A stretch of DNA of 34,077 bases from Octopus bimaculoides (Eukaryota), in NCBI RefSeq assembly GCF_001194135.2, contig NC_069009.1:694718-728794 (forward strand). The letters are read 5' to 3'. Under the pieces are notes generated by a model. It was given only the letters and a program-made list of their open reading frames with translations, did not search any database and was not told the DNA's origin. Every line of letters begins with the position of its first letter. Position 1 is the stretch's first letter. This document shows positions 5,235 through 28,342 of this stretch, piece by piece. The position numbers were made by a program, and so were the translations under genes.

Positions 5235-6202
5235 AATTATATCAGAATTTAATGAGAAAATGGTAAAAGAAGAAAAGATGGTGGTGGTGGTGGTGGTGGT
5301 GGTGGGGGGGGGGTAGAGTGTTCCACCTTTTCCCCCCTCTGGGGATAAATGAATACTTTTTTTTAAAGAAAAAGGCGCAGCAGTGGCTGTGTGGTAAGTA
5401 GCTTTTGCTTATGAGGAAACAAAGCCGTCTCGTGTGAATTTTCCGAAACTCCTTTCAACCCACAGGAAAAAAATGTTCACAACAAATTCCAATATAGTCG
5501 TAATCTACACAATCTGAAGCGTATTTATAGAAACATTCATTAAAAGATATCAATTTTACTGGATGTTATGAGGCAACATAATCAGACAGCAAATCAAAAT
5601 TCCATAAATACAATCTGTAATTCTGTAGACTCGAATGGAAAAATGTATCGCTGAAGGACTTCAGTTTGAACAATTTTTATGTTTCATATTTACATCGTTT
5701 TATTAAATCCATTCAGTTGTTAAGCATAAATAAATCCTGGAATTAAAACTATATACTGTCAGGCGGCTTTTGGCCAACCCTATATATGTGGAGTTATGCC
5801 ATTTTATTAAAAATATCTATTCAAGATATTCCAAAAGCAAAGCGTGGTTACAGCCACAATCCTTAAGAATAATTTTTTTCCCGGACTTAACTCTAATCTG
5901 TATCATAAAAAATCTATGAGGAAACAAAGTCGAAACACGTGAAATATCCCTCACCCAACATGTTTTTCTTTGTTTATTTTTCCCACATTGTGTTATAATC
6001 GTAACCTCGATCGTCTGAAAATTATCAGTGGAACATCCCATTATAAAACACTCATTTTAATTAAACTTATGAGGAAACAAAGACAGTGGGAGGGGCAACT
6101 TGTGTAATTATACCGGACTTAATACCGGTAACAAAAAGTTTTCGATTACCCGATGTTCACCTTAATGTTTACTAAACAACATATATATTATATATACCTT
6201 AC

Positions 6203-6887
6203 CTGTTGTTGCTGTATAAAACCAGTGTTTACTGTAAAATATATTTAGTTATTACGACGCGATCTCACGAAGCCATGACCGGAAACAGGAAGTCCGTGTC
6301 ATGTGACTTCTCACTAACGAATAAAATCACAAAGCTTCTCATAAAACCAAAACTATATGAACTGCTGTGTGTGTATATATATATATATATATATAAATAA
6401 ATGAATAAATATATATATGGGTTGAAAAGTTGGGGGCACTGGGAAACCTCTCTAATGTATCCCCGTCTCAAGTATTCTGGGGGATCGGACCAGTTTAGTT
6501 GATTATCTGGCAGTGCCAACGGTTGCTTCTCTTTCACACGTCTTAGAGACTCAGTCACGCGGAACGAGGGAGGATAGGGAAGAGAGGAGGCGCTTAAAAG
6601 AAATGACAAAGCAAGCTGTCACGCTTAAACGCGTAAAGTTGTGGATGTTGTCACTTATGAGTGTCAGAATATTGGCAGAATGAAATGTGGCTTTTCAGTA
6701 AATTATGCCGGTGTTTATTGAGAGAGGGAAAAAATTGTGAATGACACCGGTGTATATTTCAGACAGGGGGAATTTGTCAATGGAGGAGTATCACCTACGT
6801 TACTGCTAATTAGTCTCTAATTAGTTCAGCTAATATAATTATAACGTGTAGTAATTATGTTACGTTAATGTTAGTGGATGATATCGG
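6203..6887. promoter_or_regulatory. Putative bidirectional promoter between A1 exon 1 (-) and B1 exon 1 (+)
   Basis: Outward-facing donors CAG|GTAAGG on - (exon ends 6203) and CGG|GTGAGT on + (exon ends 6887). Visibly CpG-richer than its flanks, with GGAAGT (ETS-like) and CATGTGAC motifs. Both halves are conserved at the other cassettes. Confidence 0.6.
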
Positions 6888-7621
6888 GTGAGTTACATAT
6901 TTCAAAGTCGGCGTTCCATCCCTTTAATTATTTATCATTTCGTCTGCAGACCACATCGTTAATTGTTTTTTTTCTTGATTTATTTACTCAAGATCAGGAC
7001 AGAGGAGGATCCATTCTAATTACCAACAAATGAGGGAATAGGTTTCCTGACCCTGCTTGACTTAAAAAAAAAAAAAAAAAGAAATACAACAAAACACAGG
7101 GACTTTTCTTTTATCTGCAGTGCACAGTATAAATGCGTACATACACGCATACAAAGGCACATATATATATACATATCATTTATTAGGCATCTACTTGTGT
7201 ACATATACACATTTTCTTTTATCTTACACTGCCGTATTGATAATGCAGAAATTATAAGTCTTTTCGCCTACAAGAGTCTGTTTTTGTATGGAAATTGGAA
7301 AGGACTTTAAACTCTTATGGTGAGTTAACCATTAGAAAACAGTTTATAGCAGAGACTCCATCTAAGAATATCTGAAGAAGGAATTGTAATTCCGAAATAT
7401 CATCGGACTATAGATAACTAAATTACAACAGGTATATAATCCATTTTTTTATATTATAGTGCATTGTTGTACCATTCAAAAAGTTTTATTCTTTATAAAA
7501 AAATATATAATTTCCACACTTGTAAGCCGAAATCCACGATTCACGACTAAAAGCTAAACCGTCAGAGATAATATTTGAAGACATTTCTCAGATTTCTGTC
7601 TCAGATTCCTGAAGAATTGAT

Positions 7622-8683
7622 ATGGAAAACGTTAAGGACTTGGACACTTCTACCACAACTAATTTTACCGATGTAGATTCAGCAGCATCGACAGACAGAG
7701 ACGAGAAACCTTTATGGAGTGAAATATTTATTAATCAAGCATCAGTAATTGAACCTATTCCTGAATATTGCTGTGAGATTTGTGGGAAAACATTCAATTC
7801 AGAACAGGATTTCTTCACGCATAAAGACGCACACAATAAGGAAAAACCATTCCATTGTGAAATATGTGGGAAATATTTTGCATATAACAGTTATTTTATA
7901 AGCCATCAAAGAATCCACACTGGAGAAAAGCCGTATCATTGCGAAATATGTGAGAAATCTTTCACTCAGAATTCTCATCTTGTTATCCACATACGTAGTC
8001 ATACAGGGGAGAAACTATTTCATTGTGAAATATGTAATAAATCATTTGTCTCCAACAGTAATTTAACAAAGCATAGGAGAATACATACTGGAGAAAAGAA
8101 CTTCCATTGTGAAGTCTGTGCGAAAGCATTTGGTACTAACAGTGATTTAATCAGGCACAGAAGGATACACACTGGAGAAAAACCATACCACTGTGACATA
8201 TGTGGGAAATCGTTTACTCAAAATTCTTGCCTTGTTATTCACACTCGTAGCCATTCTGGATTAAAACCATATCACTGTGAAGTGTGTGGGAAATCTTTTG
8301 TGGATAATAGTAATCTAAACAGACACAGACAAACACACGCTAAAGAAAAACTGTTCAACTGTAAAACTGTGGTAGAGACTAAGCCTTTTAACTCTGAAAC
8401 TTCTGTAGAAGCTAAGACTTTTAACTTTGAAACTTCGGTAGAGACTAAGCCTTTTATCTCTGAGACTTTGGTGGAGGCTAAGCCTTCAAACTGTGAAACT
8501 TTGGTGGAGGCTAAGCCTTCAAACTGTGAAACTTTGGTAGAAGCTAAGCCTTTTAACCGTGAAACTTTGGTAGAGGCTAAGCCTTCAAACTGTGAAACTT
8601 TGGTAGAAGCTAAGGCTTTTAACTGTGAAACTTCGGTAGAAGCTAAGGCTTTTAACTGTGAAACTTCAAGTGAGGCTGTCTAA
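7622..8683 (+). CDS. C2H2 zinc-finger protein, type B (B1), 7 fingers plus 11-aa repeat tail, 353 aa
   Basis: Acidic leader, 7 C2H2 fingers (CEICGK type), then about 9 tandem copies of V-E-[AT]-K-[PAT]-[FS]-N-C-E-T-[LS]. Confidence 0.93.
   Translation: MENVKDLDTSTTTNFTDVDSAASTDRDEKPLWSEIFINQASVIEPIPEYCCEICGKTFNSEQDFFTHKDAHNKEKPFHCEICGKYFAYNSYFISHQRIHTGEKPYHCEICEKSFTQNSHLVIHIRSHTGEKLFHCEICNKSFVSNSNLTKHRRIHTGEKNFHCEVCAKAFGTNSDLIRHRRIHTGEKPYHCDICGKSFTQNSCLVIHTRSHSGLKPYHCEVCGKSFVDNSNLNRHRQTHAKEKLFNCKTVVETKPFNSETSVEAKTFNFETSVETKPFISETLVEAKPSNCETLVEAKPSNCETLVEAKPFNRETLVEAKPSNCETLVEAKAFNCETSVEAKAFNCETSSEAV
8342..8680 (+). repeat. Coding 33-bp minisatellite (about 9 units plus a proto-unit) in B1; paralog at 18768-18982+
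   Basis: Unit gtagaagctaagccttttaactgtgaaacttcg/ttg, with the frame preserved throughout. Confidence 0.95.
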
Positions 8684-9562
8684 TATATTTATAAAGAATG
8701 ACTTTCACTACAAAAGGAAGGGACCAACCACATTGACTCAATTTATGAATATATCATCATTATACATAACTGAGTACTGAGATTAATTAAACTGACTTAA
8801 TTACTATTCTATGATATATTTTATTGACACAAAACAGCACATCTTGGAAAATTTGTAGACATTCATTAATTGCACATGTTTTGTCTAATTAAGAATTTAT
8901 AAACAAATGGTGGTGCCTGTGTTTATTAAAATGAATTAAACTGACTTAATTATCATTTATGATATAAACTATTATGGTTAACATTTGAGGATTCCAGCAT
9001 ATAATTCCCATGCAGTCCCTTCTGTTTCATAAAGAAGATTGTTGTTACCTCTTTGATGTCTTTATCAATCTTTCTCTTATAAATTTAAACTCATTAGTTC
9101 GCCATGCATGCATTATAGAACATACGTCATGATGAATGAAGCTGAAGAAAGAAAAAGAAACCATTGTCTTTGAATTCTTGTAATCTATGAATCTAGTCTC
9201 TTTTGGGAGAAACATTTTCATTAAAGATTTGTGAATTATGAATTATAATTGTTTTAATGTTCACTTTTCCATGTTGGCATGGATCAAATGGAATTTGTTG
9301 AGACAGGTTTTCTTTGGTTGGATGCCCTCCCATCACACATTTTACATGCAAAGTAATATTTCTTCATGGTTGGTCACATTTCCATTGGCGGTTTGAAACA
9401 AACAGCCCTCACATTTTATATGGTGATACACATCTGCAACAATCACTTGTCATCAAGATGTGGAGACATGCACAAACGCACACACGTGCACCCCTCACCC
9501 CACAAGACGAGCTTCTTTTCATAAAGCTGGGCCTTATATGTAGCTGCTTAAATATGTGCCCC

Positions 9563-9700
9563 TTAATCTAGCGGTTCGGCAAAAGAGACCGATAGAATAA
9601 GTAGTACGCTTACAAAGAATAAGTCCTGGGGTTGATTTGTTCGACTAAATGCGGTGCTCCAGCATGTCCGCAGCCAAATGACCGACACAAATAAAAGAAT

Positions 9701-9705
<5 letters not shown>
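9563..9705 (+). mobile_element. SINE family 1, 3' portion
   Basis: tagcggttcggcaaaagagaccgatagaataagta..ccagcatg..caaatga..acaaataaaagaat, nearly matching 15750-15868. Confidence 0.8.
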
Positions 9706-9736
<31 letters not shown>

Positions 9737-10234
9737 NNNNNNNNNNNNNNNNNNNNNNNNNNNNNNNNNNNNNNNNNNNNNNNNNNNNNNNNNNNNNNNN
9801 NNNNNNNNNNNNNNNNNACCGAAATATAATAAATGATTTACAATTTGATTAATTAACTCCATAACATTGGTGCTAAATATGTAGCCTTTCTGCATTAACC
9901 GAAGTATTGTAATGAATCAGTGAATGACGATTTAATGAAACAAAGAATAATCGAGCAGGGTTTTGCAATTATGCGATTGCGAATACGACCAAAGCAATCC
10001 GGGAAAATACAAAATTTGACCTCGTCCCGAGTAAACGGAACGAATACATAAAATCGATTGAATGTCATTTATTGCAGATTTCTCCTTTTAATTTCTGAAC
10101 GGACTAATTACGGTTGTTCAATATACGGTGCACTTCAACTACTACACTATTTTTTTTTTCAATTTTTCCACCGGGTTACTTCATCATAATAATCATCATC
10201 GCTACAACGACCACTATTTAGGTAGGTATTAGAG

Positions 10235-10357
10235 ATTTGTGATTTTATTTGGTAGAGAAGAAACGAAACATGATTCATTTTACTTCCGTTTCCTTTATCG
10301 GTACGTCGTTATTTAAAAGTATTTAATTGCAAGCACTAGTTGAAATGGCAATAACAG
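10235..10357 (+). promoter_or_regulatory. Putative non-coding first exon / TSS region of A2
   Basis: Aligns with the reverse complement of 6203-6335 (gtgattttatt..tag.gagaag; acatga..acttcc.gtttcc; gcaa.aacag|gtaagg). Confidence 0.6.
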
Positions 10358-10695
10358 GTAAGGTGTATATATATATATATATATATATATCGATTAAAAT
10401 TAAGGTGTACATTAGGAATTGAAAACCTTTAGGTGTTGCTGCTTAGAGAGCGATATTAATTCCCAGCATTGATCGTCTGAAATCGATAATTAAATAGGTT
10501 TAATCAATAACAAGACAAATCAAGATCATTGGTTCTCGTCAATTTTTTGCCTAGGGATCCCTTCGTTCTCTATTTTACTCTACTGGACCTTCGCATTTTT
10601 TATAATGAAATATTATTAGGGGTTGTATTGTGTATTGTAGAAATATAAACAATAAATTTTACCAATATGATTGTATATGAACTAAGGGCCAAGCG

Positions 10696-11023: not shown

Positions 11024-11654
11024 CTCTGATTAATTAAACCCGGAACCATGTGTTGGGAAACAAGCTTCCTACCACACAGCCACGCCTGCACCTATATAAA
11101 TCATCGTCATTTAACATCCACTTTTTGATGCTTGCATGGGTCAGACGGAGATAATTGAGGCAGATTGTCTATGGCCAGGTGCCCCTCCTGTCACCAACAC
11201 TCATCTGTTTCCAAACAAGGTAATATTTCTCCATGGCCAAACTGGAAACAATGACGATGCTTGTATAACAGTGACAATCATTTTGCAACTATCACATAAT
11301 GTCAAGATATGGAGACACAAACATACGCACATATATACATATACATTTACTAAATCCATTTCACAAGGTTTTGGTCTGCCCAAGGCTGTAGTACAAGACA
11401 CTTATCCAATGTGCCAGTTAGTGGGACTGAACACAGAATCATATGGTTGGGAAGCAAACTTATTATACAACCATGCCTGTATCTTATATATACATTTTCA
11501 AACTGGAATGTAACAGTGGATAACTTAATTTATTCCAGTAAAATGCTTGGTTCTATTTAGTTTTACTTTATAAAAATGTAAAATTTCCATTGTTGTGTCT
11601 ATGATTGTTTAAATATTTTCTTTATTTAAATTTTTTGTTTCTCAATTATTTCAG

Positions 11655-11777
11655 AATATCAGAAACAGCAAAGAATTGTTTCTGTCAGATCTGTCACCAA
11701 TATTAACCATCTTTTCAAGACTAAAGGAAAATGTTACACAGAATGGATATATATATTCCTTTTTATATAGATCTATG
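11655..11777 (+). other. Putative internal 5' exon of A2 (homologs: A3 25615-25725 -, A1 3724-3854 -)
   Basis: Conserved acceptor atttcag|aatatcagaaac in all three type-A genes and donor ctatg|gtgaat in A2/A3 (ctata|gttgaa in A1). Confidence 0.6.
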
Positions 11778-12026
11778 GTGAATTAAAAATAAATATTTCT
11801 TTGGAACTGAGAGAAATATCAACATTTATTTTCTTCACTGCTTGAAAAATTTACAAACAGACTTTGCATTTTAATTAAACTTGGATTACAAAGGAATTTT
11901 GTAACAACCTCAGATAATCAAAATTTGGTGCTTATGGAAATATTGCAGCAGTAGTGTTTGTTAGGTATATAGTACAAGGACAAAAAGAGGAAAACTTGTG
12001 TCTGTTGTCGTAAGAAAACGAAAATT

Positions 12027-12800
12027 ATGGAAAATGAATTAATTGAGAACAAGGTTAAAAGTGAAATACAGAAGATTGACTTTTCTGATGATGTAAAGAA
12101 CGAGAAAGGAAAACCGTCATTTAATTGTGATATCTGTGGTAAATCGTTCTGCCGAAAAGGTAACATTACTAAACACAAACTTATTCATACAGGAGAAAAA
12201 CCATATCATTGTGATATCTGTGGTAAATCATTTTATCAAAGTGATCACTTAACTATTCACGTACGCATTCATACAGGGGAAAAGCCATATTTCTGTGATT
12301 TCTGTGGTAAATCATTCTCGGAGAATAGTTCTTTAACTAAACATAAACGTATTCATACTTTGGAAAAACCACATAATTGTGATTTCTGCGGTAAATCATT
12401 TTCTAATGGTGACGGTCTCACCAGACACAAACGAATTCATACGGGTGAGAAGCCACATCCCTGTGATATCTGTGGTAAACCATTCTCTCAAAGAGGTGAC
12501 TTAAGTAGACACAAATACATCCATGCAGAAGAGAAACCATATCATTGTGATATCTGTGGTAAGTCATTCTCTCAAAAAGGTAATTTAATTAAGCATAAAC
12601 GTATTCATACAGGAGAGAAACCATATCACTGTGATATCTGTGGTCAGTCATTCTGTGCAAGTTGTGACTTAACTATACACATACGTATTCATACAGGTGA
12701 GAAACCATATCACTGTGATATCTGTGGTAAGTCATTCTCTAAAAAAGCTACGCTGAACTCTCATAAAAATATTCATACAAGAGAGAAACACCTTGTGTGA
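12027..12800 (+). CDS. C2H2 zinc-finger protein, type A (A2), 8 fingers, 257 aa; truncated by a 2-bp deletion
   Basis: 31-aa leader homologous to A1/A3 and 8 intact fingers. The ORF ends after a 2-nt deletion in the linker (gagaaa-caccttg-tgtgat versus gagaaa-cgttacctg-tgtgat in A3); further finger DNA continues out of frame. Confidence 0.9.
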
Positions 12801-14110
12801 TGTGTGTGGTAAATCATTGTCTAATGATGGTTACTTAACACAAACACATCCATGCGATTGAGAAGCCATATCACTGTGATATTTGTGATAAATCATTCTC
12901 TGAAAGTAGTGGTTCAGACATGAACACATTCACACAGGGTAAATTCCATATCACAATGATATCTGTGAAGGACATATTCTTTCAAAGAAGAATCTTTACA
13001 AAACACAAGTGCACTCAAACAGGAGAAAAGCTATATCACTGCAATGTCTGTGATAAGTCATTCTCTGAAAATGGTGACTTAATTCAACCCAAACTTATTC
13101 ATACAGGAGAGTAACCATATCACTTCAATATCTGGTAAATCGTTTTCTGATGACAACCAATTAACTGAACACAAACACATTCATACAGGAGTAAAAATAT
13201 ATATCCCTGTGACATCTGTATTAAATCTTTATCTCATGGATATATATTAACTACTCGTAAAGGGGAGAAAAAAAAACCTTATCGTTATGATGAATCATCT
13301 GCTGAATCTTGGTCACTTAACTAAACCCAAGCATATTCATAGAGGAAACAATATTGTGACATCTGTTGCAAATTATTACCTCATGGATATAAGTTAACCA
13401 CTAACAAACACACATGCAAGGGAGAAACCTTATGACTATCACATCTGTGGTAAGTGCTTCACTAAAACTGGTCACGTAACTAAACACAAGCTAATTCATA
13501 TGGGAGAAAAGCAATATTGTGACATTTGTAGCAAATCATTATCTTATGGATAAATAATCATACAGGGGAAAATCCTATTCTTTGTGACGAATCCTTAACT
13601 AAACACTAGTTTATCCAAACATGAGACAACCCATATCATTGTGGCATCTGTTGTAAATTATTATCTCTAGGATATACTTCAACTTCTTATAGAAGGGAAA
13701 AAACCTTATCATTGTGACATCTGTGATGAATCCTTCACTGAAACTGGGGCCACTGAACTAAACTCAAACTCATTCAAACAGGACAGGAATCATATTTCTG
13801 TGATATCTAGCGATGCCTGCTGGGTTCGGCTGCTCTACATTGATAAGAGGCAATAATACCTTGAAACTAGTCTGTAGATGCCAGACCAGCAAGGGGAAGC
13901 GGCTGACCTCCCCTTGTTCGAAGGTTATAATGGACACAGGTTCGTGTGTGACATAGCTAGCTAGAGGCGATGGCCTCTTGGAGCTAATCAACGGCAGCAT
14001 TCGTCCTATTTTTTGGACTGCCATGTTGGCTTGGCGATAACTATTGATATGCTAAATCATTTTCTCAAAAACGATCCCTGACTGACCATATTGTTATTAA
14101 TATGCATCAA
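12801..14110 (+). pseudogene. Decayed C2H2 finger array downstream of the A2 stop
   Basis: Repeated tgtgatat/catatcactgt/aaatcattct/cattcatacagga motifs with frameshifts and stops, including SENGDLIQPKLIHTGE* (ending 13114) and a split finger reading AKSFSQKRSLTDH after 14050. Confidence 0.85.
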
Positions 14111-15224
14111 TAACTCTATCAAAATATAGGCTCATAATATACACAGTGCAACAAGCACTGCAAGTGTGATTACATTTAGTTGGGTTAACTGTTTCCTGTT
14201 TCTCATTTGTATAATTAATAATGTTATCATTATTGGTTATCTTTCATTGGAGTAGCCTAGAAGTTGTATAAATGTACTCTATACAAGAAAATATTAATAT
14301 TCATATTGATATTGATACATAAGGAGTGCAGTCAAACACGTTTCACTGGTTTTTTTTTTGTTGGTTTGTATATTTTGTTGCCCATATTCATTTTCTCGTT
14401 TTTGTTAGTAAATCTGTTAATATTAAGAATATTGCTATTTCAAAATACTCATCAAATTTGTTGGTATACTAATGAAATAAAAGAAAGAATTTGATGAACA
14501 AAAATGAAGTGTTGCATGTTATATCTTCCTTGTGTTTATCTCAATTGTTAGAATTGATTTTGTGGAAAATAAATTATATTAAGTGCATTCAATAAGTATC
14601 AGCCTTTATTTTTTTCCTGCCAAAGATAATGCCACTGGGGCAAAACCCTTTGGATGGAAGGTTTTTTTGTTGGTTTGTATATTCTGGATGGGAGGTGACA
14701 CCACCCTTCCTGTACATCAGATCCCTCGAAGCCCTGAAATGACCCATCGTCTGTGCACCAGAAATAGGATAGACCGTGAATTTGTGGGGCTGCTAGTTTT
14801 TGGTGCATACTTACATTGACTGTCGTATTTTAGACTGTAAAATACATAAGTAAAACAATATGGAAGTGAAAATGTGAAAGAGATGAGGTGAAGTCATGAA
14901 AAGACGAAAAAAAGGTTGATACTGAATGTAATAGGGGAAAAAATTATGTTTAAATTAAAATGTAATTTTCATTAATAAAACAAATTGCACTCAGAGTGGG
15001 AGCTGATGTCTGTTGGGGAGTGAAATGTTGCTGTGGTCAGTCTCTCAACTTCACAGGCCTTCATGGTTTATTTTGCCACCTAAAATGCTGGTCGTTTCAC
15101 TCATCAAACTAAGCTAAACTTAAATATTTAAGTGGACCTGGCTCAGGTAAAATATCCCCTCTGGTCTGGAGCTGGCAGGGTTAGCCAGAAATGATGGAAA
15201 GAGACTAGATGGACTTACCCTTTG

Positions 15225-15690: not shown

Positions 15691-15694
15691 TGTT

Positions 15695-15868: not shown

Positions 15869-16024
15869 TGAAATTGGTATCATCTCTGGTGGAGGAATCA
15901 ATTTAGATATAGAATAATATTTGGTTCAAAACTGAGTTAGTGACAAAGCCTAGAAGTTGTCGCGAATGAGTAAATGTTGACCTGAAGAATATTATTCACA
16001 CGCTAACGATATTATATATCTTAC

Positions 16025-16940
16025 CAGTTATTGTTGCATAATCCACTGTTAACAGTGTAATATCTTTAATAATACTGGACAACCTATTAAAACCGCAAAC
16101 AGAAACAAACTGGTTCATGTGACTTTCCGTTTTTTTAATAAAGAAAATCACGAAACTGTTCACAAAAACGAAAATAGGTATACATTTTTTTGTGTGTGCC
16201 TGTAACCAATAAGTCTTCCTAGACGTCGCATCCCAGTAATAGAGCAGTCCTGGGAACATCGCCATTCTATTAAATGTGTTTATTGAAAAATCTCAATACG
16301 CCTGAGTCACAAAAAGACGAGGAAGTTATCAGGTAGTCATGAAATATGTTAAAAACAACAGCTAAATCACGGGAATCATATGAATTCCCGTATATAGAAC
16401 ACAAACTCGCAAAAACTTCCTGAAAATTCCAAAAAGTAAAAAGGAGTTACGAGGGCTTGTATGGGGTGCTTATATGACCAACTGACCGATGTCCATCGAA
16501 ACCCGAGCTTAGTGTAAAGAACTAGCAAGTTCGATTCTCTTCCTGCGAAGGGGAAATATTTCTGTTAATGATTTGCTTCTGGTTGATATGAAAATGGCAA
16601 ACGAAGAGAAAATCAGGGGGAATTTGCAAGGAATAGATCTATGGATATGGTTTGTCAAAAGGAATTTTGGGATTATCAAATGTCGGTTTTCAGTAAATTA
16701 TATTAGGGACATCTAACCCGCAATACCGTTGTATATTGAGACGGAAGAAAAAAGTAATGAACAACCCGACTGTATATTCGGACGGGAAAATCGTAAATGG
16801 CACCGGTTTCATTCAGACAACAACGAGAATTACCAACGTTACTGCGAAATAGTTTCTAATTAGTTCAGCTAATTTAATTATAACATTTACAGTAATTATG
16901 TCACGTTAAGGTAAACGTTAATGTTTGTGGACAATATCGG
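16025..16940. promoter_or_regulatory. Putative bidirectional promoter upstream of B2, with an orphan type-A first exon on -
   Basis: CTG|GTAAGA donor on - at 16025 with the gtgatttt..aagtcacatga..ctgttt.cgg block; CGG|GTGAGT donor on + at 16940; 16660-17000 is homologous to 6660-6990. Confidence 0.55.
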
Positions 16941-17519
16941 GTGAGTTACATATTTCAAGATCGGTGTTCCACCCCTTTAATTATTTATCATTTTATCTGC
17001 AAACCACATCGTTAATTGGTTTTTTTTCTTGATTTATTTACTCAAGATCAGGACAGAGGAAGATCCATTTTAATTACCAACAAATGAAGAAATAGGTTTC
17101 TTGCTGGACTTTTCAGTTGATTTTCAAATCAAACAGAAAAAAAAAGAAATACAACAGAACACAGGGACTTTTCTTTTATCCGCAGTGCACAGTATAAATG
17201 CGTACATACACGCATACAAAGGCACAAATATATATATATATACATATCATTTATTAGGCATCTACATGTGTATATGTACACATATTCTTTCATCTTACCG
17301 TATTGATAATGCAGAAATTATAAGTCTTTTCGCCTACAAGAATATATTTTTGTATGGAAATTGGAAAGGACTTAACAAAACGCTTATGGTGAGTAAAAGA
17401 TATATAATTTCCACACTTGTAAGCTGAAATCCACGATTCACGACTAAAAGCTAAACCATCAAAGAATATACTTCAAGACATTTCTCAAGATTTTTGTCTC
17501 AGATTCCTGAAGAATTGAT

Positions 17520-18982
17520 ATGGAAGACGTTAAGGACTTGGACACTTCTACCACAACTGATTTTACCGATGTAGATTCAGCAGCATCGATTGACAGAGAC
17601 GAGAAACCTTTATGGAGTGAAGTATTTATTAACCAAGCATCAATGATTGAAACTATTCCTGAATATTGCTGTGAGATTTGTGGGAAAACATTCAATTTAG
17701 AACAGGATTTCTTCACACATAAAGACGCACACAATAAGGAAAAACCATTCCATTGTGAAATATGTGGGAAATATTTTGCATATAACAGTTATTTTATTAG
17801 TCATCAAAGAATCCACACTGGAGAGAAGCCGTATCATTGCGAAATATGTGAGAAATCTTTCACTCAGAATTCTCATCTTGTTATCCACATACGTAGTCAT
17901 ACAGGGGAGAAACTATTTCATTGTGAGATATGTAATAAATCATTTGTCTCCAACAGTAATTTAACAAAACATAGGAGAATACACACCGGAGAAAAACCGT
18001 ATCATTGTGAAATATGCTTCAAGTCTTTTGTCTCAAATTGTAAATTAACAAGACACAAAAGNNNNNNNNNNNNNNNNNNNNNNNNNNNNNNNNNNNNNNN
18101 NNNNNNNNNNNNNNNNNNNNNNNNNNNNNNNNNNNNNNNNNNNNNNNNNNNNNNNNNNNNNNNNNNNNNNNNNNNNNNNNNNNNNNNNNNNNNNNNNNNN
18201 NNNNNNNNNNNNNNNNNNNNNNNNNNNNNNNNNNNNNNNNNNNNNNNNNNNNNNNNNNNNNNNNNNNNNNNNNNNNNNNNNNNNNNNNNNNNNNNNNNNN
18301 NNNNNNNNNNNNNNNNNNNNNNNNNNNNNNNNNNNNNNNNNNNNNNNNNNNNNNNNNNNNNNNNNNNNNNNNNNNNNNNNNNNNNNNNNNNNNNNNNNNN
18401 NNNNNNNNNNNNNNNNNNNNNNNNNNNNNNNNNNNNNNNNNNNNNNNNNNNNNNNNNNNNNNNNNNNNNNNNNNNNNNNNNNNNNNNNNNNNNNNNNNNN
18501 NNNNNNNNNNNNNNNNNNNNNNNNNNNNNNNNNNNNNNNNNNNNNNNNNNNNNNNNNNNNNNNNNNNNNNNNNNNNNNNNNNNNNNNNNNNNNNNNNNNN
18601 NNNNNNNNNNNNNNNNNNNNNNNNNNNNNNNNNNNNNNNNNNNNNNNNNNNNNNNNNNNNNNNNATATCACTGTGAAGTGTGTGGGAAATCTTTTGTGGA
18701 TAATAGTAATCTAAACAGACACAGACAAACACACGCTAAAGAAAAACTGTTCAACTGTAAAACTGTGGTAGAGACTAAGCCTTTTAACTCTGAAACTTCG
18801 GTAGAAGCCAAGCCTTTTATCTCTGAGACTTTGGTAGAGGCTAAGCCTTTAAACTGTGAAACTTCAGTAGAGACTAAGCCTTTTAGCCATGAAACTTCAG
18901 AAGAGGCTAAACCTTTTAACCGTGAAACTTCGGTAGAAGCTAAGCCTTTAAACTGTGAAACTTCTGTTGAAGCCAAGGCTTT
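17520..18982 (+). CDS. C2H2 zinc-finger protein, type B (B2), close paralog of B1; partly in assembly gaps, true end unknown
   Basis: First ~477 nt about 96% identical to B1 by manual count; 4 full fingers plus most of a 5th before gap 18062-18664; last finger (VDNSNLNRH) and at least 6 units of the 11-aa tail after it. The stop is probably in gap 18983-19125; the ORF-track end (ELITIL) is a gap artefact. Confidence 0.88.
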
Positions 18983-21332: not shown

Positions 21333-21381
<49 letters not shown>

Positions 21382-22300
21382 NNNNNNNNNNNNNNNNNNN
21401 NNNNNNNNNNNNNNNNNNNNNNNNNNNNNNNNNNNNNNNNNNNNNNNNNNNNNNNNNNNNNNNNNNNNNNNNNNNNNNNNNNNNNNNNNNNNNNNNNNNN
21501 NNNNNNNNNNNNNNNNNNNNNNNNNNNNNNNNNNNNNNNNNNNNNNNNNNNNNNNNNNNNNNNNNNNNNNNNNNNNNNNNNNNNNNNNNNNNNNNNNNNN
21601 NNNNNNNNNNNNNNNNNNNNNNNNNNNNNNNNNNNNNNNNNNNNNNNNNNNNNNNNNNNNNNNNNNNNNNNNNNNNNNNNNNNNNNNNNNNNNNNNNNNN
21701 NNNNNNNNNNNNNNNNNNNNNNNNNNNNNNNNNNNNNNNNNNNNNNNNNNNNNNNNNNNNNNNNNNNNNNNNNNNNNNNNNNNNNNNNNNNNNNNNNNNN
21801 NNNNNNNNNNNNNNNNNNNNNNNNNNNNNNNNNNNNNNNNNNNNNNNNNNNNNNNNNNNNNNNNNNNNNNNNNNNNNNNNNNNNNNNNNNNNNNNNNNNN
21901 NNNNNNNNNNNNNNNNNGACACTTGCTGAAGGTGTCACGCAGTGGGACTGAACCTAGAACCATGTGGTTAGGCAGCAACTAGAAAATTATTTAATTCCTA
22001 TATGATTGGCATTGGCTGAAAATTGGAGTTTACATCATCAGAGACATTGGAATTTTGGATAAGTTAGAAAAATGCACCCTCCATTGTTTTTTTTTGCAAA
22101 ATATAAATTCAGACAATTCGTTTCTACTCCAGGCACAAGGCCCGAAATTTTTGAGGAAGGGGCCAGTCAATTAGATTGACCCCAGTATGCAAATGGTACC
22201 TAATTTATCGACCCTGAAAGGATGAAAGGCAAAGTTGACCTCGGTGGAATTTGAACTCGGAACATAAATTCAGACAAAATTGAGATAAAAACAAGGCAGC

Positions 22301-23310
22301 AACATGTAAAACTTCATTTTTGTTCATCAAATTAATTCTTTCTTTTATTTTATTAGTACAACAACAAATTTGATGAGTATTTTGAAATATCAATATTCAT
22401 AAAATTACTAGATTTACTAATGAGAACAAGAAAAACTATTTCAGCTTTCTTATTTTACTAGTCATTGGAGTGTGGCCATGTTGGGGCACAACCTTTTTGT
22501 TTTTATTTGTATACCAAAAAATTTGATGAGTATTTTGAAATACCAATATTCATAAAATTACTATATTTACTAATGAGAACAAGGAGAGCTATTTCATCTT
22601 TCTTATTTTACTAGTCATTGGAGTGTGGCCATGTTGGGGCACAACCTTTTTTTTATATTTGTATTCCAAAAAGTTTGATGAGTATTTTGGAATATATCAA
22701 TTTTCCAAATGCTAACAGATTTACTAACAAAAACATGAAATGAATTTGGTCAACAAAATACATAAACTAACAAAAAGACACTTTCCATCGAAAGGATTTT
22801 GCCTAAGTGGCATTAGTTTTGGCAGGAAAATAAAAATGAAGACAGATTCTTTATGAATGCACTTCATATAAAGCTTTTGTCTTCTCCACAAAATAAATTC
22901 TGGCAATAGAAATAAACACATGGCAGTAAGAACACGTAAAACTTCATTTTTGTTCATCAAATTAATTCTTTCTTTTACTTTATTGGTAAACCAATAAATT
23001 TGATAAATATTTTGAAATGTCAGTATTCATAAAATTACAAGAATGAGAACAAAGAAAACCATTTCATCTTTAACTAGTTATTGGGGTGTGGTCATGCTGG
23101 GGCACAACCTTTCTTTTATTGGTAAACCGACCAGTTTGTCGAATATTTTGAAATGTCAATATTCATGAAATTACAAGATTTACCAATGAGAACAAAGAAA
23201 ACTGTTTCATTTTTCATCTTTTAATTATTTAAGTCATTGAAGTGCGGCCATGCACCAACAAATTTGATATTTTGGAATATCAATATTCTCAATGTTAACA
23301 GATTTATTAA
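22301..23310. repeat. Two-level tandem repeat in the A3 3' flank (630-bp unit containing ~152-bp subunits)
   Basis: aaca(t/c)gtaaaacttcatttttgttcatcaaattaattctttctttta at 22301 and 22931; tgatgagtatttt at 22371, 22524 and 22676. Confidence 0.85.
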
Positions 23311-23389
23311 GAAAAACAGCGTCGCCTTAATTGGCACATGTGCTGGTGGCACGTGAAAAACAACATTCAAACTCCTGCATGAATGAGCT

Positions 23390-23860
23390 TGTTTAGTTAA
23401 TTGGCTTCAATCAGATAATGATTTATCATAAATATCACAGTGATAAGTTTACTCTCCTGTATGAAGAAGTTTGTGTTTAATTCAGTGACCATTTTCAGAG
23501 AACGACTTAGGCTTATCACACACATTTCAGTGATATGGCTTTTTACTCTGTATGACTGCATTTGTGTTTTCTCAATTACTTTTAGGGAATGGTTTACCAC
23601 AGATATCACAGTAATAAAGTTCCAGTTCTGTTTCAAAGAGCATGATTTAGTAAAGTGACCAGTTTCAGTGAAGAATTCACCACAAATGCGACAGTGATAA
23701 GGTTTTAGTCCTGTATGAATGAGTTTGAGTTTAGTTAAGTTACCAGTTTCAATCAAGTAAATCAGATGTCACAATGATATGGGTTCTCTGCTGTATGTGT
23801 TTGTGTTTAGTTAAACATCTGTCATCAGAGAATGGTTTAACAGATATCACAGTGAGATGC
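23390..23860 (-). pseudogene. Decayed C2H2 finger array downstream of the A3 stop
   Basis: About 5-6 broken fingers, e.g. KPYHCRICGEFFTETGHFTK in ORF 23397-23756, and a second ...HTGE* at 23449-23451. Confidence 0.85.
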
Positions 23861-25300
23861 TTACTCTCCGGTATGAATAAGTTTGTGTTTAGTTAAGTCA
23901 CCATTTTCAGAGAATGATTTACCACAGATTTCACAGTGATATGACGTTTCTCCTGTATGAATGTGTTTGTGTCTAGTTAAGTTACTACTCTGAGAGAATG
24001 ATTTACCACAAATATCACAGTGATATTTTTTCTCAACTGCATGAATACGCTTATGCTGCGTTAAGTAGCCGGTGTCAGAGAACGATTTACCACACACATC
24101 ACACAGGTAACGTTTCTCCCCTGTATGAATATGTTTGTGAGAAGTTAAGGTACCTTTTTTAGAGAAAGACTTACTGCAGACGTCACAGTGATATGGCTTC
24201 TCACCTGTGTGAATGCGAACATGGTTAGTCAACTGATCATTTCGAGTGAATGATTTATCACAGATATCACAGCAATATGGTTTCTCTTCAGTATGAATAC
24301 GTTGGTGAGTAACTAAGTTAGCTTTTTGAGAGAATGATTTAGCACAGACATCACAGTGATATAGCTTCTGTCCTGTATGAATGCGCTTGTGTCTAATCAA
24401 GACTGTAGCATCAGAGAATGACTTGCCACAGGTGTTACAATGATATGGTTTCTCTCCTGTATGAGTACGCTTGTGTACAGTTAAACCACTACTTTCAGAA
24501 AACGATTTACCACAGATATCACAGTGATATGGTTTCTCTCCTGTATGGATATATTTGTGTTTAATTAAGTTACCTTTTTGGCAGAAGGATTTTCCACAGA
24601 TGTCACAATTATATGGTTTCTCACCTGCATGAATATACTTGTGTCTATTTAAGTCACTACTTTGAGTGAATGATTTACCACAGGTATCGCAGTGATGTTG
24701 TTTCTCTCCTGTATGAATGTGCATGTGTTTAGTGAAGCGGCCTTCATCAGAGAATGATTTATCGCAGATATCACAGTGGTATGGTTTTTCCACTGAATGA
24801 ATACGTTTATGTTTAGTTAAGGAACTATTCACAGAAAATGATTTACCACAGACATCACAGAAATATGGCTTTTCCCCTGTATGAATGCGTATGTGACTAG
24901 TTAAGTGATCACTTTGAATAAATGATTGACCACAGACATCACAGTGATATGGTTTTTCTCCTGTATGAATACGTTTGTGTTTAGTTAAGGCACCATTTTG
25001 AGCAAATGATTTACCACAGATTTCACAGTGATGTGGTTTCTCTCCTGTATGAATAAATTTATGTGTATATAAGCTGCTATTTCGAGGGAACGACTTGCCA
25101 CAGATATCACAGCGATATGGCTTCTCTCCTGTATGAACAGATTTATGCTTAGTCAGTTTGTTCTTTTGAGAGAATGATTTGCCACAAATATCACAATGAT
25201 ACGATTTTTTACCTTTCTCAATCTTTACATCATCAGGAAAGTCAATCCTTTTTGTTTCTGCTTCACATTTAAACTTGTTTACACTTAAATCCTTTTCCAT
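23861..25300 (-). CDS. C2H2 zinc-finger protein, type A (A3), 16 fingers, 479 aa
   Basis: 33-aa leader + 16x28 aa minus the final KP = 479; stop in the linker (TGE*). Confidence 0.95.
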   Translation of the reverse strand: MEKDLSVNKFKCEAETKRIDFPDDVKIEKGKKSYHCDICGKSFSQKNKLTKHKSVHTGEKPYRCDICGKSFPRNSSLYTHKFIHTGEKPHHCEICGKSFAQNGALTKHKRIHTGEKPYHCDVCGQSFIQSDHLTSHIRIHTGEKPYFCDVCGKSFSVNSSLTKHKRIHSVEKPYHCDICDKSFSDEGRFTKHMHIHTGEKQHHCDTCGKSFTQSSDLNRHKYIHAGEKPYNCDICGKSFCQKGNLIKHKYIHTGEKPYHCDICGKSFSESSGLTVHKRTHTGEKPYHCNTCGKSFSDATVLIRHKRIHTGQKLYHCDVCAKSFSQKANLVTHQRIHTEEKPYCCDICDKSFTRNDQLTNHVRIHTGEKPYHCDVCSKSFSKKGTLTSHKHIHTGEKRYLCDVCGKSFSDTGYLTQHKRIHAVEKKYHCDICGKSFSQSSNLTRHKHIHTGETSYHCEICGKSFSENGDLTKHKLIHTGE

Positions 25301-26514
25301 AGTTTTCCTTTTCTTATCAGGATATACACAAATTTTCTTCTGTGTGTTTTTGTATTATATTCCTAGCAAGTATTACTACTGCTATATTTCCATCAACTGT
25401 GATTTTTGGTGATATCTGAAGATGCTGCAAACTCCTTTGTAAATCATTCCAACTTTTAAAATAAGTATGTAAAACAATTTCGTATATAATATATGCAACG
25501 AAAAACAGAAATTAAAATGCAAAATTAGTTTGTGTACTTTTCAGGAAGTGAAGAAGATAAATATTGATATTTATCTTGGTTCAAAAATACAAAAAGAATT
25601 TACCAGGAATTCACCATAGATTTATATAAAAAGAATTCTTTATAATATTTTCCCTTAGTCTTTGAAAAGATGATGAATGTTGACCATGTATTTGAAGTAA
25701 ATAGTTCTTTGCAGTTTCTGATATTCTGAAATAATAGAGTAACAAGAATGTAAGATAATGAGGATAGTTAAAAAGTAGAGGTACAACAGGGGAAATTTCT
25801 TTTGGATTAATTTTTGGATATATATTCTTATACATGTATGATGAGCTTTCTACAGTTACCATCAACCAAATTCATTAATAAAGCATCCATTGGTACAAGA
25901 CTATAGTAGAATATACATGTCCAAAATGCTATGCTGCAGGACTGAACCTGGGACCATGTGGTCGTGAAGCGAATGTCTAAGAGAGAGAGTAAGAGCTGTA
26001 ACTGACATGTCCAGAAATCATTTACTACAGGGTGCAAATGAGGGGGTGTTTGTGATACCCTAATATACATATAAACACGTCTATTATGTATCGCGTCTGC
26101 AGCTTCAAAATCAGCTTCATTCTGACAAGATACAAATTTATTGTTAAAGATGAGTGGTTTTTCATAGAAAAGGTGAATACAATGGCATAACACACTGATT
26201 CACTGTTTACATCTAGAAACGATAAGTTGACGAAGACTATGTGAATCTTTCATGATTTAAGCAGTAATTTAGAGGTGGAAACACGCAACTACATTGTTAT
26301 GCTTAATGGTAATCTCCGATGTTTAAAATAAGAAAAAAAAACCCCAAGAAATTAAGTGTTTTGGTGTAACAGATCATTTTCGACTCTATACTACAGGATT
26401 ATCACTTTATTCTAACGATCGGAATATTTATATTATTTTATTTGTTTCAGTCATTTAACTACGGCCATGCTGGAGCACCGCTTTTAGTAACAAGTAAAAG
26501 AGAGTAAAAGAGAA

Positions 26515-26730
26515 TGATCGCAAATTTTGGCACAAAGCCAGCAATTATGAGGGAGTCGGTAAGTCAATTACATTGACGCCAGTGTTCAACTGGTACTTAT
26601 TTTATCAACTCCGAAAGAATGAAATGCAAAGATGACCTCGGCGAAGTTTGAACTTGGAATGTAAAGATGGTTAAAATGCCGCTAAGCATTTTGCCAGTCG
26701 TGCTAACGATCCTACCAGCTCCCCACCTAG
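26515..26730 (-). mobile_element. SINE family 2 (other copies about 515-690 and 22130-22275, also -)
   Basis: Shared block ccagt..aactggtacttattttat..gaaaggatgaaaggcaaagt.gacctcg..gaatttgaactc in three places; the reverse complement has a tRNA-like head (agctggtaggatcgttagc..gttcaaa). Confidence 0.75.
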
Positions 26731-26831
26731 CAGGATAATATTAAAATCGATCTCTGACTAGCAACATTTAAAAGGTGTTCGATTCCCAATGTATACTTTA
26801 ATTTTACAAAATCATAAATTATATATCTTAC

Positions 26832-27839
26832 CTATTATTGCGGTATAAACCAGTGTTTACGGTGAAATAGGTTTTAATTACACGAAAACGTCCTTCATAC
26901 ACCAAGTGCGATTTAACCCGGACTAAAAGTTGACAACGGAACTTTATAAAAAGCGACTCGGCAACACAAACGGCGAAATGTAATTAATTTATCTGTAAAT
27001 ACGCTACTAGATATCTATGTATTATCTCTAATATATATATATTTTTTTCTGTGTGTGTGTGTGTGTGTGTANNNNNNNNNNNNNNNNNNNNNNNNNNNNN
27101 NNNNNNNNNNNNNNNNNNNNNNNNNNNNNNNNNNNNNNNNNNNNNNNNNNNNNNNNNNNNNNNNNNNNNNNNNNNNNNNNNNNNNNNNNNATAAACATAT
27201 AAACATATAAACATAAACATATAAACATATAAACATAAACATATAAACATATAAACAAAAGGACATGAAGCTGGTTGCATGGATAAATCTGTGGTCTATA
27301 CGGGTGGCAACGAATTAAGTAGCTTGCGTTTGAGTATGGAGTAGCCAAGCCTAAGATGGTATATTTGGATTATCAGTGGCCAGGGGTTTGAAGTTTAACG
27401 TCGCATATAGGACCCAGGGTAATGTTTTGAAATATTTTGGAGGGGGCGAAAGTACGTCTTATTACTCTATCAATAACGCTAGTTTTTAATTACAAAAGAA
27501 AAAAGCGAAGTAATTACTAACTTAGTAAGTTCGATACTAAACTAATTTCCCTACTTTAATTTCTATACGACCAAGTTAACATTTAAAATTTTCTCTTTAT
27601 TTATTCATAACAGGTTGAATTCAATTTAAGGAGTAAATGAATATAATGAAAGGGTTTCTGAATGTTTCAGATATGAAATTACGTTAGGAACTTTTAACTT
27701 ATGACACCGGGATTATTCTGAAAGGGTAATTATCGACTACACCGGCTACTTTGTTTCTAATTAGTAGAAGTAATTTAATTATTCCCTGTTGTAATTGTGT
27801 CCTGTTAAAGTAAACATTAATGTTTGTGGATATGATAAG
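26832..27839. promoter_or_regulatory. Putative bidirectional promoter between A3 exon 1 (-) and B3 exon 1 (+)
   Basis: cttacctattattgcggtataaaccagtgtttacggtgaaata matches A1 cttacctgttgttgctgtataaaaccagtgtttactgtaaaata. 27750-27950 matches the B1/B2 block (tttctaattagt, gtaaacattaatgtttgtgga, ttaattggtt, tcaggaca). The + donor AAG|GTGAAC is weaker. Confidence 0.55.
27030..27256. repeat. Compound microsatellite (TA)n/(TG)n, gap, then (ATAAACAT)n
   Basis: Seen directly. Other simple repeats: (CA)n 2639-2657, (GGT)n/poly-G 5279-5313, and (TA)n near 6375, 9709, 10367, 21334 and 31052. Confidence 0.9.
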
Positions 27840-28342
27840 GTGAACTATGTTTCAGCTTTGGTGCTTCATCCCCTTCGTGGTTTATCATTTCCTTTCATCC
27901 TCAAACTACATTGTTAATTGGTTGTTCCCTATTTTACTGGGTCAGGACAAATAAGGATCGCTTAAGGGTCGTACCGAAAGATCGCCCAAATATTATTTGG
28001 ATTACCACAATAGAACACATGGTTCACTTTTTAACACGTAAGAGAAGGTTATACAGACAAATGTCGAGTTTTTGATCGACAAATCTTACAACGTCATGTT
28101 TACACTTTTTAATTTCTTTACCGAAAAATCGACGCGCCTCTGTCTGCGGCAGCGTGAGCTCCACTTGGATAATATCCTGTCGCACACAAACACTAAAGAA
28201 AACAGTAAAAGAAACCTCTGTAAGTCGAAACTATACTTTTATTTCGTATTGCGATATCCAAGACAAGAGACTAAACTTTAAGAGACGATACCTGCAGACG
28301 TTTCTCTTAGTTTTTTTTTTAAAGAATTTCTGTAGAATTAAT

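What the first reader, a model, noticed from the sequence alone, without database searches (positions are those of the whole stretch)
6190..27950. The duplicated unit is a head-to-head pair of ZNF genes from two subfamilies sharing a putative bidirectional promoter
Seen: upstream of every type-B gene (6660-6990, 16660-17000, 27640-27950) is the same conserved block ending in a +-strand donor. 0.7-1.0 kb to its left is a --strand copy of a second block ending in a GTAAG donor (6203, 16025, 26832), which is the same block that heads A2 on + (10357). A1<-->B1 and A3<-->B3 are complete divergent pairs. Established: head-to-head promoters co-regulate gene pairs, and coleoid genomes carry large clustered C2H2-ZNF expansions. 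Inference: the cluster grew by duplicating an A/B cassette, so A and B proteins may be co-expressed partners. I do not know this organisation to be described for these clusters but cannot check the literature.
Basis: partly seen in the sequence, partly recalled or inferred. Interest (0 to 1): 0.8.

Follow-up and report, generated by a model that had tools for sequence, protein, structure and literature searches.

The report
Head-to-head octopus zinc-finger gene pairs
In an Octopus bimaculoides zinc-finger gene cluster, genes of two subfamilies sit back to back with conserved, probably non-coding first-exon/promoter blocks under 1 kb apart, an ordinary divergent-gene-pair layout copied three times; it is a local feature and not a rule for these genes.

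Summary
The window is Octopus bimaculoides CM046629.1 from 694,718. All three B-type ZNF genes carry a conserved upstream block, and an unrelated A-type block lies 0.7-1.0 kb to its left on the minus strand. That A block also heads A2 on plus. All seven predicted donors are conserved, and matching acceptors precede each ORF. The four promoter regions are the least CpG-depleted stretches of the window (o/e 0.99-1.64 against a 0.45 background).

The B block also lies upstream of B-type genes on other chromosomes and in O. sinensis, so it is a gene-linked 5' element and not a transposon.

- The spacers share no conserved element beyond a microsatellite, so there are two separate proximal promoters in one island.
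- A2 has its own promoter-like region without a B partner.
- The copy at 16025 is an orphan.
- B1/B2 are much younger (K2P 0.05-0.23) than anything on the A side (0.35-0.64), so the latest event involved the B unit alone.
- None of five other B-type loci sampled shows an A block head-to-head.

Splicing, TSSs and co-expression are untested, and partnership between A and B proteins has no support. This is ordinary architecture, not found described for cephalopods in the papers searched. Interest is low to moderate.

The parts
2805..3854 (-). A1 exon 2. CDS 2805-3485 (226 aa, 7 fingers). Putative 5'UTR 3486-3854, beginning at the acceptor TTTCAG|AATATCAGAAAC.
   Evidence: ORF. The acceptor is conserved in A1, A2 and A3. 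The intron 3855-6202 contains assembly gap 4955-5234.
6121..6338 (-). A1 exon-1/promoter block. Last exon base 6203, donor CAG|GTAAGG.
   Evidence: nhmmer and BLAST. Donor. It ranks in the top 0.1% of GT sites in the window by an approximate PWM.
6339..6703 (.). Cassette-1 spacer. It is gap-free, holds a (TG)n(TA)n microsatellite at 6365-6420, and is CpG-non-depleted.
   Evidence: CpG o/e is 0.99 for 6204-6887 against a background mean of 0.45. There is no conserved element apart from about 40 nt at 6667-6706 shared with cassette 2.
6704..7015 (+). B1 exon-1/promoter block. It is rich in TAATTA motifs. Last exon base 6887, donor CGG|GTGAGT.
7605..8683 (+). B1 coding exon. Acceptor TGTCTCAG|ATTCC lies 17 nt before the ATG at 7622. 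CDS 7622-8683 (353 aa), with a tail of 33-bp repeats.
   Evidence: It is called as a gene in the GenBank annotation.
10230..10444 (+). A2 exon-1/promoter block. Last exon base 10357. It has no B partner, and its CpG-rich upstream region 9818-10357 abuts gap 9737-9817.
   Evidence: CpG o/e is 1.64.
11655..12800 (+). A2 exon 2. Acceptor at 11655. CDS 12027-12800 (257 aa). Decayed fingers continue to about 13808.
   Evidence: It is called as a gene.
15941..16159 (-). Orphan A-type block 'a'. Last exon base 16025, donor CTG|GTAAGA. No A gene lies to its left on the minus strand.
16722..17069 (+). B2 exon-1/promoter block, with candidate donors at 16910|16911 and 16940|16941.
   Evidence: The spacer 16026-16940 is gap-free with CpG o/e 1.16.
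17503..18982 (+). B2 coding exon, ATG at 17520. It is interrupted by gaps 18062-18664 and 18983-19125, and its stop codon is unsequenced.
23861..25725 (-). A3 exon 2. CDS 23861-25300 (479 aa). 5'UTR up to the acceptor at 25725. Decayed fingers extend down to about 23372.
   Evidence: The annotated 1078-aa model starts at 25300.
26756..26960 (-). A3 exon-1/promoter block. Last exon base 26832, donor TAG|GTAAGA.
27687..27963 (+). B3 exon-1/promoter block, with candidate donors at 27809|27810 and 27839|27840.
   Evidence: The spacer contains gap 27072-27190 and has CpG o/e 1.23.
28325..29896 (+). B3 coding exon. Acceptor TTTAAAG|AATTTC. CDS 28343-29896 (517 aa, two-finger 168-bp period).

Best explanation
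Each cassette is a divergent pair of C2H2 zinc-finger genes from two octopus subfamilies.

**Gene structure.** Each gene has a short non-coding first exon with its own proximal promoter (the A block or the B block), spliced to one large exon that holds all the coding sequence. In A genes that exon begins with a 370-425 nt 5'UTR. In B genes it begins with a 17-18 nt 5'UTR.

**Layout.** The two first exons point away from each other, with donors 0.7-1.0 kb apart. They lie in one CpG-non-depleted stretch, presumably unmethylated in the germline. The layout therefore meets the operational definition of a bidirectional promoter, but it is made of two separate, unrelated core promoters and not one shared element.

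**History.** The arrangement was inherited through old duplications (K2P about 0.35-0.6). The cluster was then remodelled. A B-only duplication or gene conversion produced B1/B2, with its left boundary near 6667/16662. The A2 unit lies in the opposite orientation. One A block (16025) lost its gene.

**Shown:** the homology, orientation, splice-site motifs, CpG signature and distances. **Inferred:** that the blocks are transcribed first exons, which donor is used, and any co-regulation.
For: - The blocks occur only at gene-appropriate places and orientations in the window.
- GGTAAG is invariant in the 4 A copies and GGTGA in the 3 B copies.
- All seven donors rank in the top 2% of the 3,626 GT sites in the window.
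- Acceptors with pyrimidine tracts are conserved: 3854, 11655 and 25725 for A, and 17-18 nt before the ATG for B. The A acceptor region is also conserved in O. sinensis and O. vulgaris A-type genes.
- CpG o/e is 0.99-1.64 in the four promoter intervals, against a background mean of 0.45 and 95th percentile of 0.98. The same holds at L008.
- The B block lies 0.5-0.8 kb upstream of the ATG, in the same orientation, at B-type genes on O. bimaculoides CM046628.1 (L008, E 9e-23) and O. sinensis CM016873.1 (L007, E 1e-8). On O. sinensis CM016885.1 (L004/L005, E 4e-14) it sits 260 bp before a B-like acceptor remnant that has no ATG and no B-type ORF. It matches weakly upstream of the two B-type genes of L009.
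- A (TG)n/(TA)n microsatellite sits at the same relative position in all three spacers.
Against: - No transcript evidence was available. The annotation held here gives CDS ranges only and has a probably chimeric 1078-aa model across the locus.
- Conservation continues past the donors.
- The B block has two candidate donors. Further GTGAGT sites lie downstream (7319|7320 in B1), so the true exon 1 may differ.
- Identity within the A block upstream of the donor is low: 47-63% in global alignment.
- Two of the five known A-block copies are orphans: 16025 here and L008 30042-30264.
- One gap lies in the A3-B3 spacer and one in A1's intron.
Confidence: 0.65

Rival explanations
1. A single shared bidirectional promoter co-regulates A and B, the A/B cassette is the unit by which the cluster (and such clusters generally) grew, and A and B proteins are co-expressed partners.
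For: - Three head-to-head block pairs lie under about 1 kb apart in CpG-rich spacers.
- The order of A block, microsatellite and B block is collinear in all three.
- A and B genes also occur near each other at L004 and L008.
Against: - The spacers hold no shared conserved element, and the blocks are unrelated to each other.
- A2 has a promoter-like region of its own.
- The B side and the A side of cassettes 1 and 2 have very different divergence.
- No head-to-head A block was found at five other B-type 5' regions.
- Published co-expression work reports that cephalopod C2H2 duplicates fall into different modules (PMC12513265).
- No dimerisation domain was detected.
Confidence: 0.2
2. The blocks are neutral leftovers of segmental duplication with no promoter or exon function. 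On this reading the real 5' ends of the genes lie elsewhere, or the genes are single-exon.
For: - Block identity (55-76%) is no higher than in the A 5'UTR or coding sequence (about 70%).
- An orphan copy persists at 16025.
- The annotation lists B1, A2 and B3 as single CDS ranges.
Against: - The blocks are islands of alignable sequence in otherwise unalignable introns and spacers.
- The B block is retained upstream of B-type genes across chromosomes and in a second species.
- The donors are conserved and high-scoring, and they coincide with CpG-non-depleted islands.
Confidence: 0.1
3. The blocks are fragments of a dispersed repeat or transposon that happens to lie near ZNF genes.
For: - Octopus genomes are repeat-rich.
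- Several true dispersed repeats flank the blocks, for example 26551-26728, 9632-9706 and 15810-15872.
- Two A-block copies are orphans.
Against: - There are only 4 A and 3 B copies in the window, all in gene-appropriate position and orientation.
- In about 229 kb of other octopus loci there is one further A copy, and B copies occur only next to B-type 5' ends.
- Rfam finds nothing on the blocks.
Confidence: 0.05

Closest known systems
Divergently paired genes / bidirectional promoters of animals (operational definition: opposite strands, TSSs under 1,000 bp apart; PMC2670823, PMC3403606)
   Same: The genes lie head to head. The first-exon donors are 684-1007 bp apart, so the TSSs are closer still. 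The intergenic region is CpG-non-depleted, and no gene lies between.
   Different: The TSSs are not mapped. The two halves are independently conserved blocks separated by non-conserved, microsatellite-bearing sequence. Both partners are paralogous-class transcription factors, whereas such pairs are typically unrelated housekeeping genes.
Tandem C2H2 poly-zinc-finger gene clusters, such as vertebrate KRAB-ZNF clusters and the coleoid C2H2 expansions described in PMC9068888 and PMC12513265
   Same: These are lineage-specific clustered poly-ZNF genes with TGEKP-linked fingers, a large exon holding the whole finger array, decaying 3' fingers, and growth by local duplication. [quoted passage not shown]
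   Different: There is no KRAB, SCAN or BTB domain. The N-termini are octopus-specific. The alternating head-to-head A/B layout was not described in the cephalopod papers checked.
Peg3/Usp29 bidirectional promoter (a ZNF gene sharing a CpG island with a divergent neighbour; PMC2615030)
   Same: A C2H2 ZNF gene is transcribed divergently from a neighbour out of a CpG-rich region.
   Different: That partner is not a ZNF, the locus is imprinted, and the shared conserved YY1 elements are defined experimentally. Here no shared element was detected.

Membership tests
Divergently paired genes / bidirectional promoter | Adjacent genes on opposite strands, 5' ends facing, with no gene between | tested here: met
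   A1(-)/B1(+), a(-)/B2(+) and A3(-)/B3(+). The only ORF in a spacer is a mechanical, low-complexity one at 6265-6609.
Divergently paired genes / bidirectional promoter | TSSs less than 1,000 bp apart | tested here: inconclusive
   The TSSs are unknown. If the blocks are first exons, the donor-to-donor distances of 684 and 915 bp (both gap-free) are upper bounds. The third, 1007 bp, includes a 119-N gap of unknown size.
Divergently paired genes / bidirectional promoter | CpG-island-like, unmethylated intergenic region | tested here: met
   CpG o/e is 0.99, 1.16 and 1.23, against a background mean of 0.45. The fraction of background windows reaching these values is 0.044, 0.001 and 0. Methylation itself was not measured.
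Divergently paired genes / bidirectional promoter | Co-expression of the two genes from shared elements | not testable with these tools
   No expression data were available. No conserved shared element was found in the spacers.
C2H2 (Krueppel-type) poly-zinc-finger genes | Tandem C2H2 fingers with H/C links | tested here: met
   Pfam zf-C2H2 and zf-H2C2_2 match with E-values from 1e-39 to 1e-128. TRF finds 84-bp and 168-bp periods.
KRAB-ZNF / SCAN-ZNF / BTB-ZNF | N-terminal KRAB, SCAN or BTB effector domain | tested here: not met
   No Pfam family other than zinc-finger-type matches at E <= 0.01 in B1, A2, A3 or B3.
Tandem duplication of a two-gene cassette | The same order and orientation of homologous parts in each copy | tested here: met
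   A block(-), microsatellite, spacer and B block(+) occur in that order three times. However, the A2 unit is inverted and the 16025 block lacks a gene.
Tandem duplication of a two-gene cassette | Both halves of a cassette show the same divergence and congruent trees | tested here: not met
   Between cassettes 1 and 2, the B side has K2P 0.05-0.23 and the A side 0.58-0.64. A1, A2 and A3 are star-like at 0.35-0.39, whereas the B tree is ((B1,B2),B3).
Dispersed repeat / transposable element | Many copies unlinked to a particular gene class | tested here: not met
   There are 4 A and 3 B copies in the window. In about 229 kb of other loci there is 1 A copy, and B copies occur only at B-type 5' ends. 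A whole-genome search was not possible.

The most novel reading that the evidence does not exclude
The A/B head-to-head cassette is a selected regulatory unit. On this reading a heterotypic pair of ZNF genes is co-transcribed from one unmethylated island, its joint duplication is a recurrent mode of coleoid C2H2 expansion, and this explains why subfamilies are interleaved in these clusters.
Probability: 0.1. Interest if true: 0.5.

Novelty: new member of a known kind. Interest (0 to 1): 0.3.

Why it matters
The analysis gives a concrete, testable gene model for octopus ZNF genes of two subfamilies: a non-coding exon 1, one intron and one large coding exon. It also gives two profile-searchable 5' blocks that could improve a locus whose current annotation is evidently chimeric.

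If the pairs prove to be co-regulated, duplication of a multi-gene unit would help explain the interleaving of C2H2 subfamilies in cephalopod clusters.

As it stands, this is an ordinary divergent gene-pair architecture. Its history is only partly cassette-wise, and there is no sign that it is general.

Tried and rejected
- **Whole-protein search with B1.** It was swamped by vertebrate poly-ZNFs and listed no octopus relative.
- **N-terminal profile search.** It returned only short proteins, apparently because hits were limited to about 1.75 times the query length.
- **Query with the fingers masked as X.** Nothing scored.
- **Look-ups of A1 and A3.** Neither is on record, because the annotation fuses A3 into a 1078-aa model.
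- **Rfam.** It found only a tRNA-like hit in A1's intron and nothing on the blocks.
- **A palindromic origin for the pair, with the A block homologous to the B block in inverse orientation.** Rejected, because only low-complexity inverted matches were found.
- **Shared motifs in the spacers.** Only microsatellites were shared. The one 10-mer common to all three, TCTAATTAGT, lies inside the B block.
- **Extending the cluster to the right through the next minus-strand ZNF.** This failed because that model is not a single ORF.
- **Albertin et al. 2015.** The paper is not held.
- **The bacterial promoter/terminator scan.** It was not used because it does not apply to an animal genome.


Full report
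**Origin and gene content.**
Exact look-ups of the B1 and B3 proteins place the window on Octopus bimaculoides GCA_001194135.2, chromosome CM046629.1, with window base 1 at 694,718.

The window holds six poly-zinc-finger ORFs:

| Gene | Coordinates | Strand |
|---|---|---|
| A1 | 2805-3485 | - |
| B1 | 7622-8683 | + |
| A2 | 12027-12800 | + |
| B2 | 17520 onward | + |
| A3 | 23861-25300 | - |
| B3 | 28343-29896 | + |

Pfam finds only C2H2-type fingers and no KRAB, SCAN or BTB domain. The two types are real subfamilies:
- They have different N-termini.
- A arrays have an 84-bp period, whereas B3 has a 168-bp two-finger period.
- B1 and B2 carry a tail of 33-bp repeats.

The B-type N-terminus recurs in at least six 50%-identity clusters. 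Five of them are named as O. bimaculoides or O. sinensis proteins. A-type N-termini occur in O. sinensis and O. vulgaris.

**Gaps first.**
- The spacers of cassette 1 (6204-6887) and cassette 2 (16026-16940) are gap-free.
- The cassette-3 spacer contains 27072-27190. This gap is flanked by (TG)n on the left and (ATAAACAT)n on the right. It sits where cassettes 1 and 2 carry a (TG)n/(TA)n microsatellite. Collinearity is therefore plausible, but the 1007-bp spacing is only an estimate.
- A1's intron contains 4955-5234, so the link between A1's coding exon and its block depends on the scaffold.
- In B2, both flanks of 18062-18664 are in the frame expected from B1 (B1 8113/8269 correspond to B2 18011/18665), but the number of fingers is unknown.
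- Gap 18983-19125 covers the position of B1's stop codon, so the B2 'ORF' running to 19148 is an artefact.
- Gap 9737-9817 abuts A2's upstream region.

**The observation.**
Profile searches built from the copies find the A block at exactly four places and the B block at exactly three, and nowhere else in the window. Pairwise BLAST within the window gives E-values of 1e-15 to 3e-15 among A1, A2 and A3. The 16025 copy gives about 1e-9 to 9e-15. The B blocks give 4e-19 to 2e-161.

The last exon bases are 6203, 10357, 16025 and 26832, all xxG|GTAAG. For B they are 6887, 16940 and 27839, G|GTGAG or GTGAA. With an approximate donor matrix written from memory, all seven rank in the top 2% of the 3,626 GT sites in the window.

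Two corrections are needed:
- Conservation does not stop at the donors. It continues about 75 nt (A) and about 130 nt (B) downstream.
- A six-copy alignment of the B block shows a second candidate donor 34 nt upstream. It is TTAAG|GTAAAC in B2 and AAA|GTAAAC in B3, and it is deleted in B1. It is the only one retained in the distant O. sinensis copies.

Some strong donor is therefore always present in this 40-nt zone, but which one is used is open.

**Gene models.**
- A genes share a pyrimidine tract and the acceptor TTTCAG|AATATCAGAAAC at 3854, 11655 and 25725. This gives a 370-425 nt 5'UTR with a small conserved uORF.
- This region is also conserved, at 58-70% identity, at A-type genes of O. 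sinensis, O. vulgaris and another O. bimaculoides chromosome.
- B genes share an acceptor 17-18 nt before the ATG.
- The A block is non-coding. Only A2 has an ATG, and that reading frame stops soon after splicing.

**Promoter signature.**
The window is CpG-depleted, with a median o/e of 0.51. The four intervals between or upstream of the blocks have o/e of 0.99, 1.64, 1.16 and 1.23. The background mean is 0.45 and the 95th percentile is 0.98. The fraction of background windows reaching these values is 0.044, 0, 0.001 and 0.

The same holds upstream of the B block, and beside an orphan A block, on CM046628.1. This signal is independent of the homology and fits germline-unmethylated promoters.

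**Not a transposon.**
About 229 kb of other octopus ZNF loci could be fetched. In these, the B block appears only next to B-type 5' ends:

| Locus | Position of B block | E-value | Relation to a gene |
|---|---|---|---|
| L008 | 11331-11577 | 9e-23 | 0.6 kb before a B-type ORF |
| L007 | 9321-9498 | 1e-8 | 0.5 kb before the ATG of a B-type gene |
| L004/L005 | 15553-15777 | 4e-14 | followed 260 bp later by a B-like acceptor remnant |
| L009 | two sites | weak | before both tandem B-type genes |

One further A block was found, at L008 30042-30264, and it is an orphan. Rfam finds nothing on the blocks.

**Shared or separate promoters.**
- The A and B blocks are not homologous to each other.
- The 300-700 bp between them share nothing across cassettes except the microsatellite and about 40 nt at 6667-6706/16662-16701.
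- A2 has a strongly CpG-rich upstream region without any B block.

The architecture is best described as two separate proximal promoters back to back in one CpG-rich island. It is bidirectional by the operational definition (PMC2670823), but co-regulation is not shown.

**History.** Distances are K2P values.

| Comparison | K2P |
|---|---|
| A1, A2, A3, exon-2 5'UTR (star-like) | 0.35-0.39 |
| B3 against B1 or B2 | 0.40-0.61 |
| B1 against B2, intron and coding | 0.05-0.10 |
| B1 against B2, block upstream part and 3' flank | 0.19-0.23 |
| Cassette 1 against cassette 2, adjacent A side | 0.58-0.64 |

- Old events could have copied whole cassettes.
- The most recent event, either a duplication or a gene conversion, involved the B unit alone. 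It covered roughly 6667-9491 and 16662-19844.
- The A2 unit (block, exon 2 and 3' repeat 14248-14686) is inverted relative to the A3 unit, whose 3' repeat is at 22261-23318.
- The 16025 block has no gene.

**Generality and literature.**
None of the other B-type 5' regions sampled has an A block head to head:
- L007 has no ZNF on the opposite strand within 9 kb.
- L009 has two B-type genes in tandem.
- L008 has B(+) followed by A(+), although a gap lies where a partner would be.
- L004 has a B-like remnant directly upstream of an A-type gene on the same strand.

The sample is small. The cephalopod C2H2 papers checked do not mention orientation or bidirectional promoters. One of them reports that duplicates fall into different co-expression modules (PMC12513265). 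[quoted passage not shown]

**Verdict.**
- Divergent pairs of two subfamilies with gene-linked 5' blocks in promoter-like islands are real, and they were inherited by duplication.
- A single shared promoter, purely cassette-wise growth and protein partnership are not supported.

This is a new example of a well-known architecture. Interest is low to moderate.

Noticed in passing
window 4227-4304 (-): A tRNA-Thr(TGT)-like sequence (Rfam 31.9 bits; ARAGORN) lies inside A1's intron, in a locally CpG-rich stretch. It may be a tRNA gene or a tRNA-derived SINE.
   Followed up: partly
window 31626-32738 (-): A Mos1/mariner-type transposase fragment (HTH_48, E 1e-21), split by assembly gap 31834-32520.
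   Followed up: partly
window 8357-8666 and 18753-18982 (+): B1 and B2 end in a tail of 33-bp (11-aa) tandem repeats of the form [11 protein letters not shown], with 9.4 copies in B1 and at least 7 in B2. This is unusual for a poly-ZNF, and B3 lacks it.
   Followed up: no
window 12800-13808, 23372-23860 and 2671-2805: The finger arrays of A2, A3 and A1 continue as out-of-frame or stop-interrupted fingers beyond the annotated stop. The A genes are either 3'-truncated relative to an ancestral array of about 21 fingers, or the assembly has indel errors.
   Followed up: partly
window 25300 leftwards past base 1 (-); L001 and L002: The GenBank annotation carries a 1078-aa minus-strand model that starts at A3's ATG and spans B2, A2, B1 and A1 beyond the window. 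It is probably a chimeric model. A1 and A3 are not annotated as separate genes.
   Followed up: partly
window 22261-23318 and 14248-14686: A 153-bp-period tandem repeat lies 3' of A3, with an inverted partial copy 3' of A2. This shows that the A2 unit is inverted relative to the A3 unit.
   Followed up: partly
window about 3560, 11935 and 25375 (A 5'UTRs): A small upstream ORF, ATGGAAATATAG (ATGGAAATATTG... in A2), is conserved about 75-90 nt before the main ATG of A1, A2 and A3 and of an O. sinensis A-type gene.
   Followed up: no
window 33101-33800: A CpG-non-depleted stretch (o/e up to 1.43) lies at the right end next to a large gap. It contains a repeat shared with 30483-30683, and no A or B block is found there. 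It remains unexplained.
   Followed up: no
window 6790-6870, 16855-16900 and 27760-27800 (B block): A dense cluster of TAATTA homeodomain-type motifs, including the palindrome CTAATTAG. The 10-mer TCTAATTAGT is the only one shared by all three cassettes. A CACCGGTG palindrome at the 5' edge of the block is conserved in five of six family copies.
   Followed up: partly
L004 15553-16114 and 17097-18427 (O. sinensis CM016885.1): A B-like block and a B-like acceptor remnant (its ATG lost) lie directly upstream, on the same strand, of a ZNF gene whose 5'UTR is A-type. This could be a promoter swap or a decayed B gene.
   Followed up: no
window 4628-4795, 11348-11477, 19851-20433, 21919-21978 and 25829-25973: A dispersed repeat family of about 130 bp occurs in both orientations in introns and intergenic DNA. 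A second family lies at 511-687, 22132-22279 and 26529-26728, abutting the A3 block.
   Followed up: no
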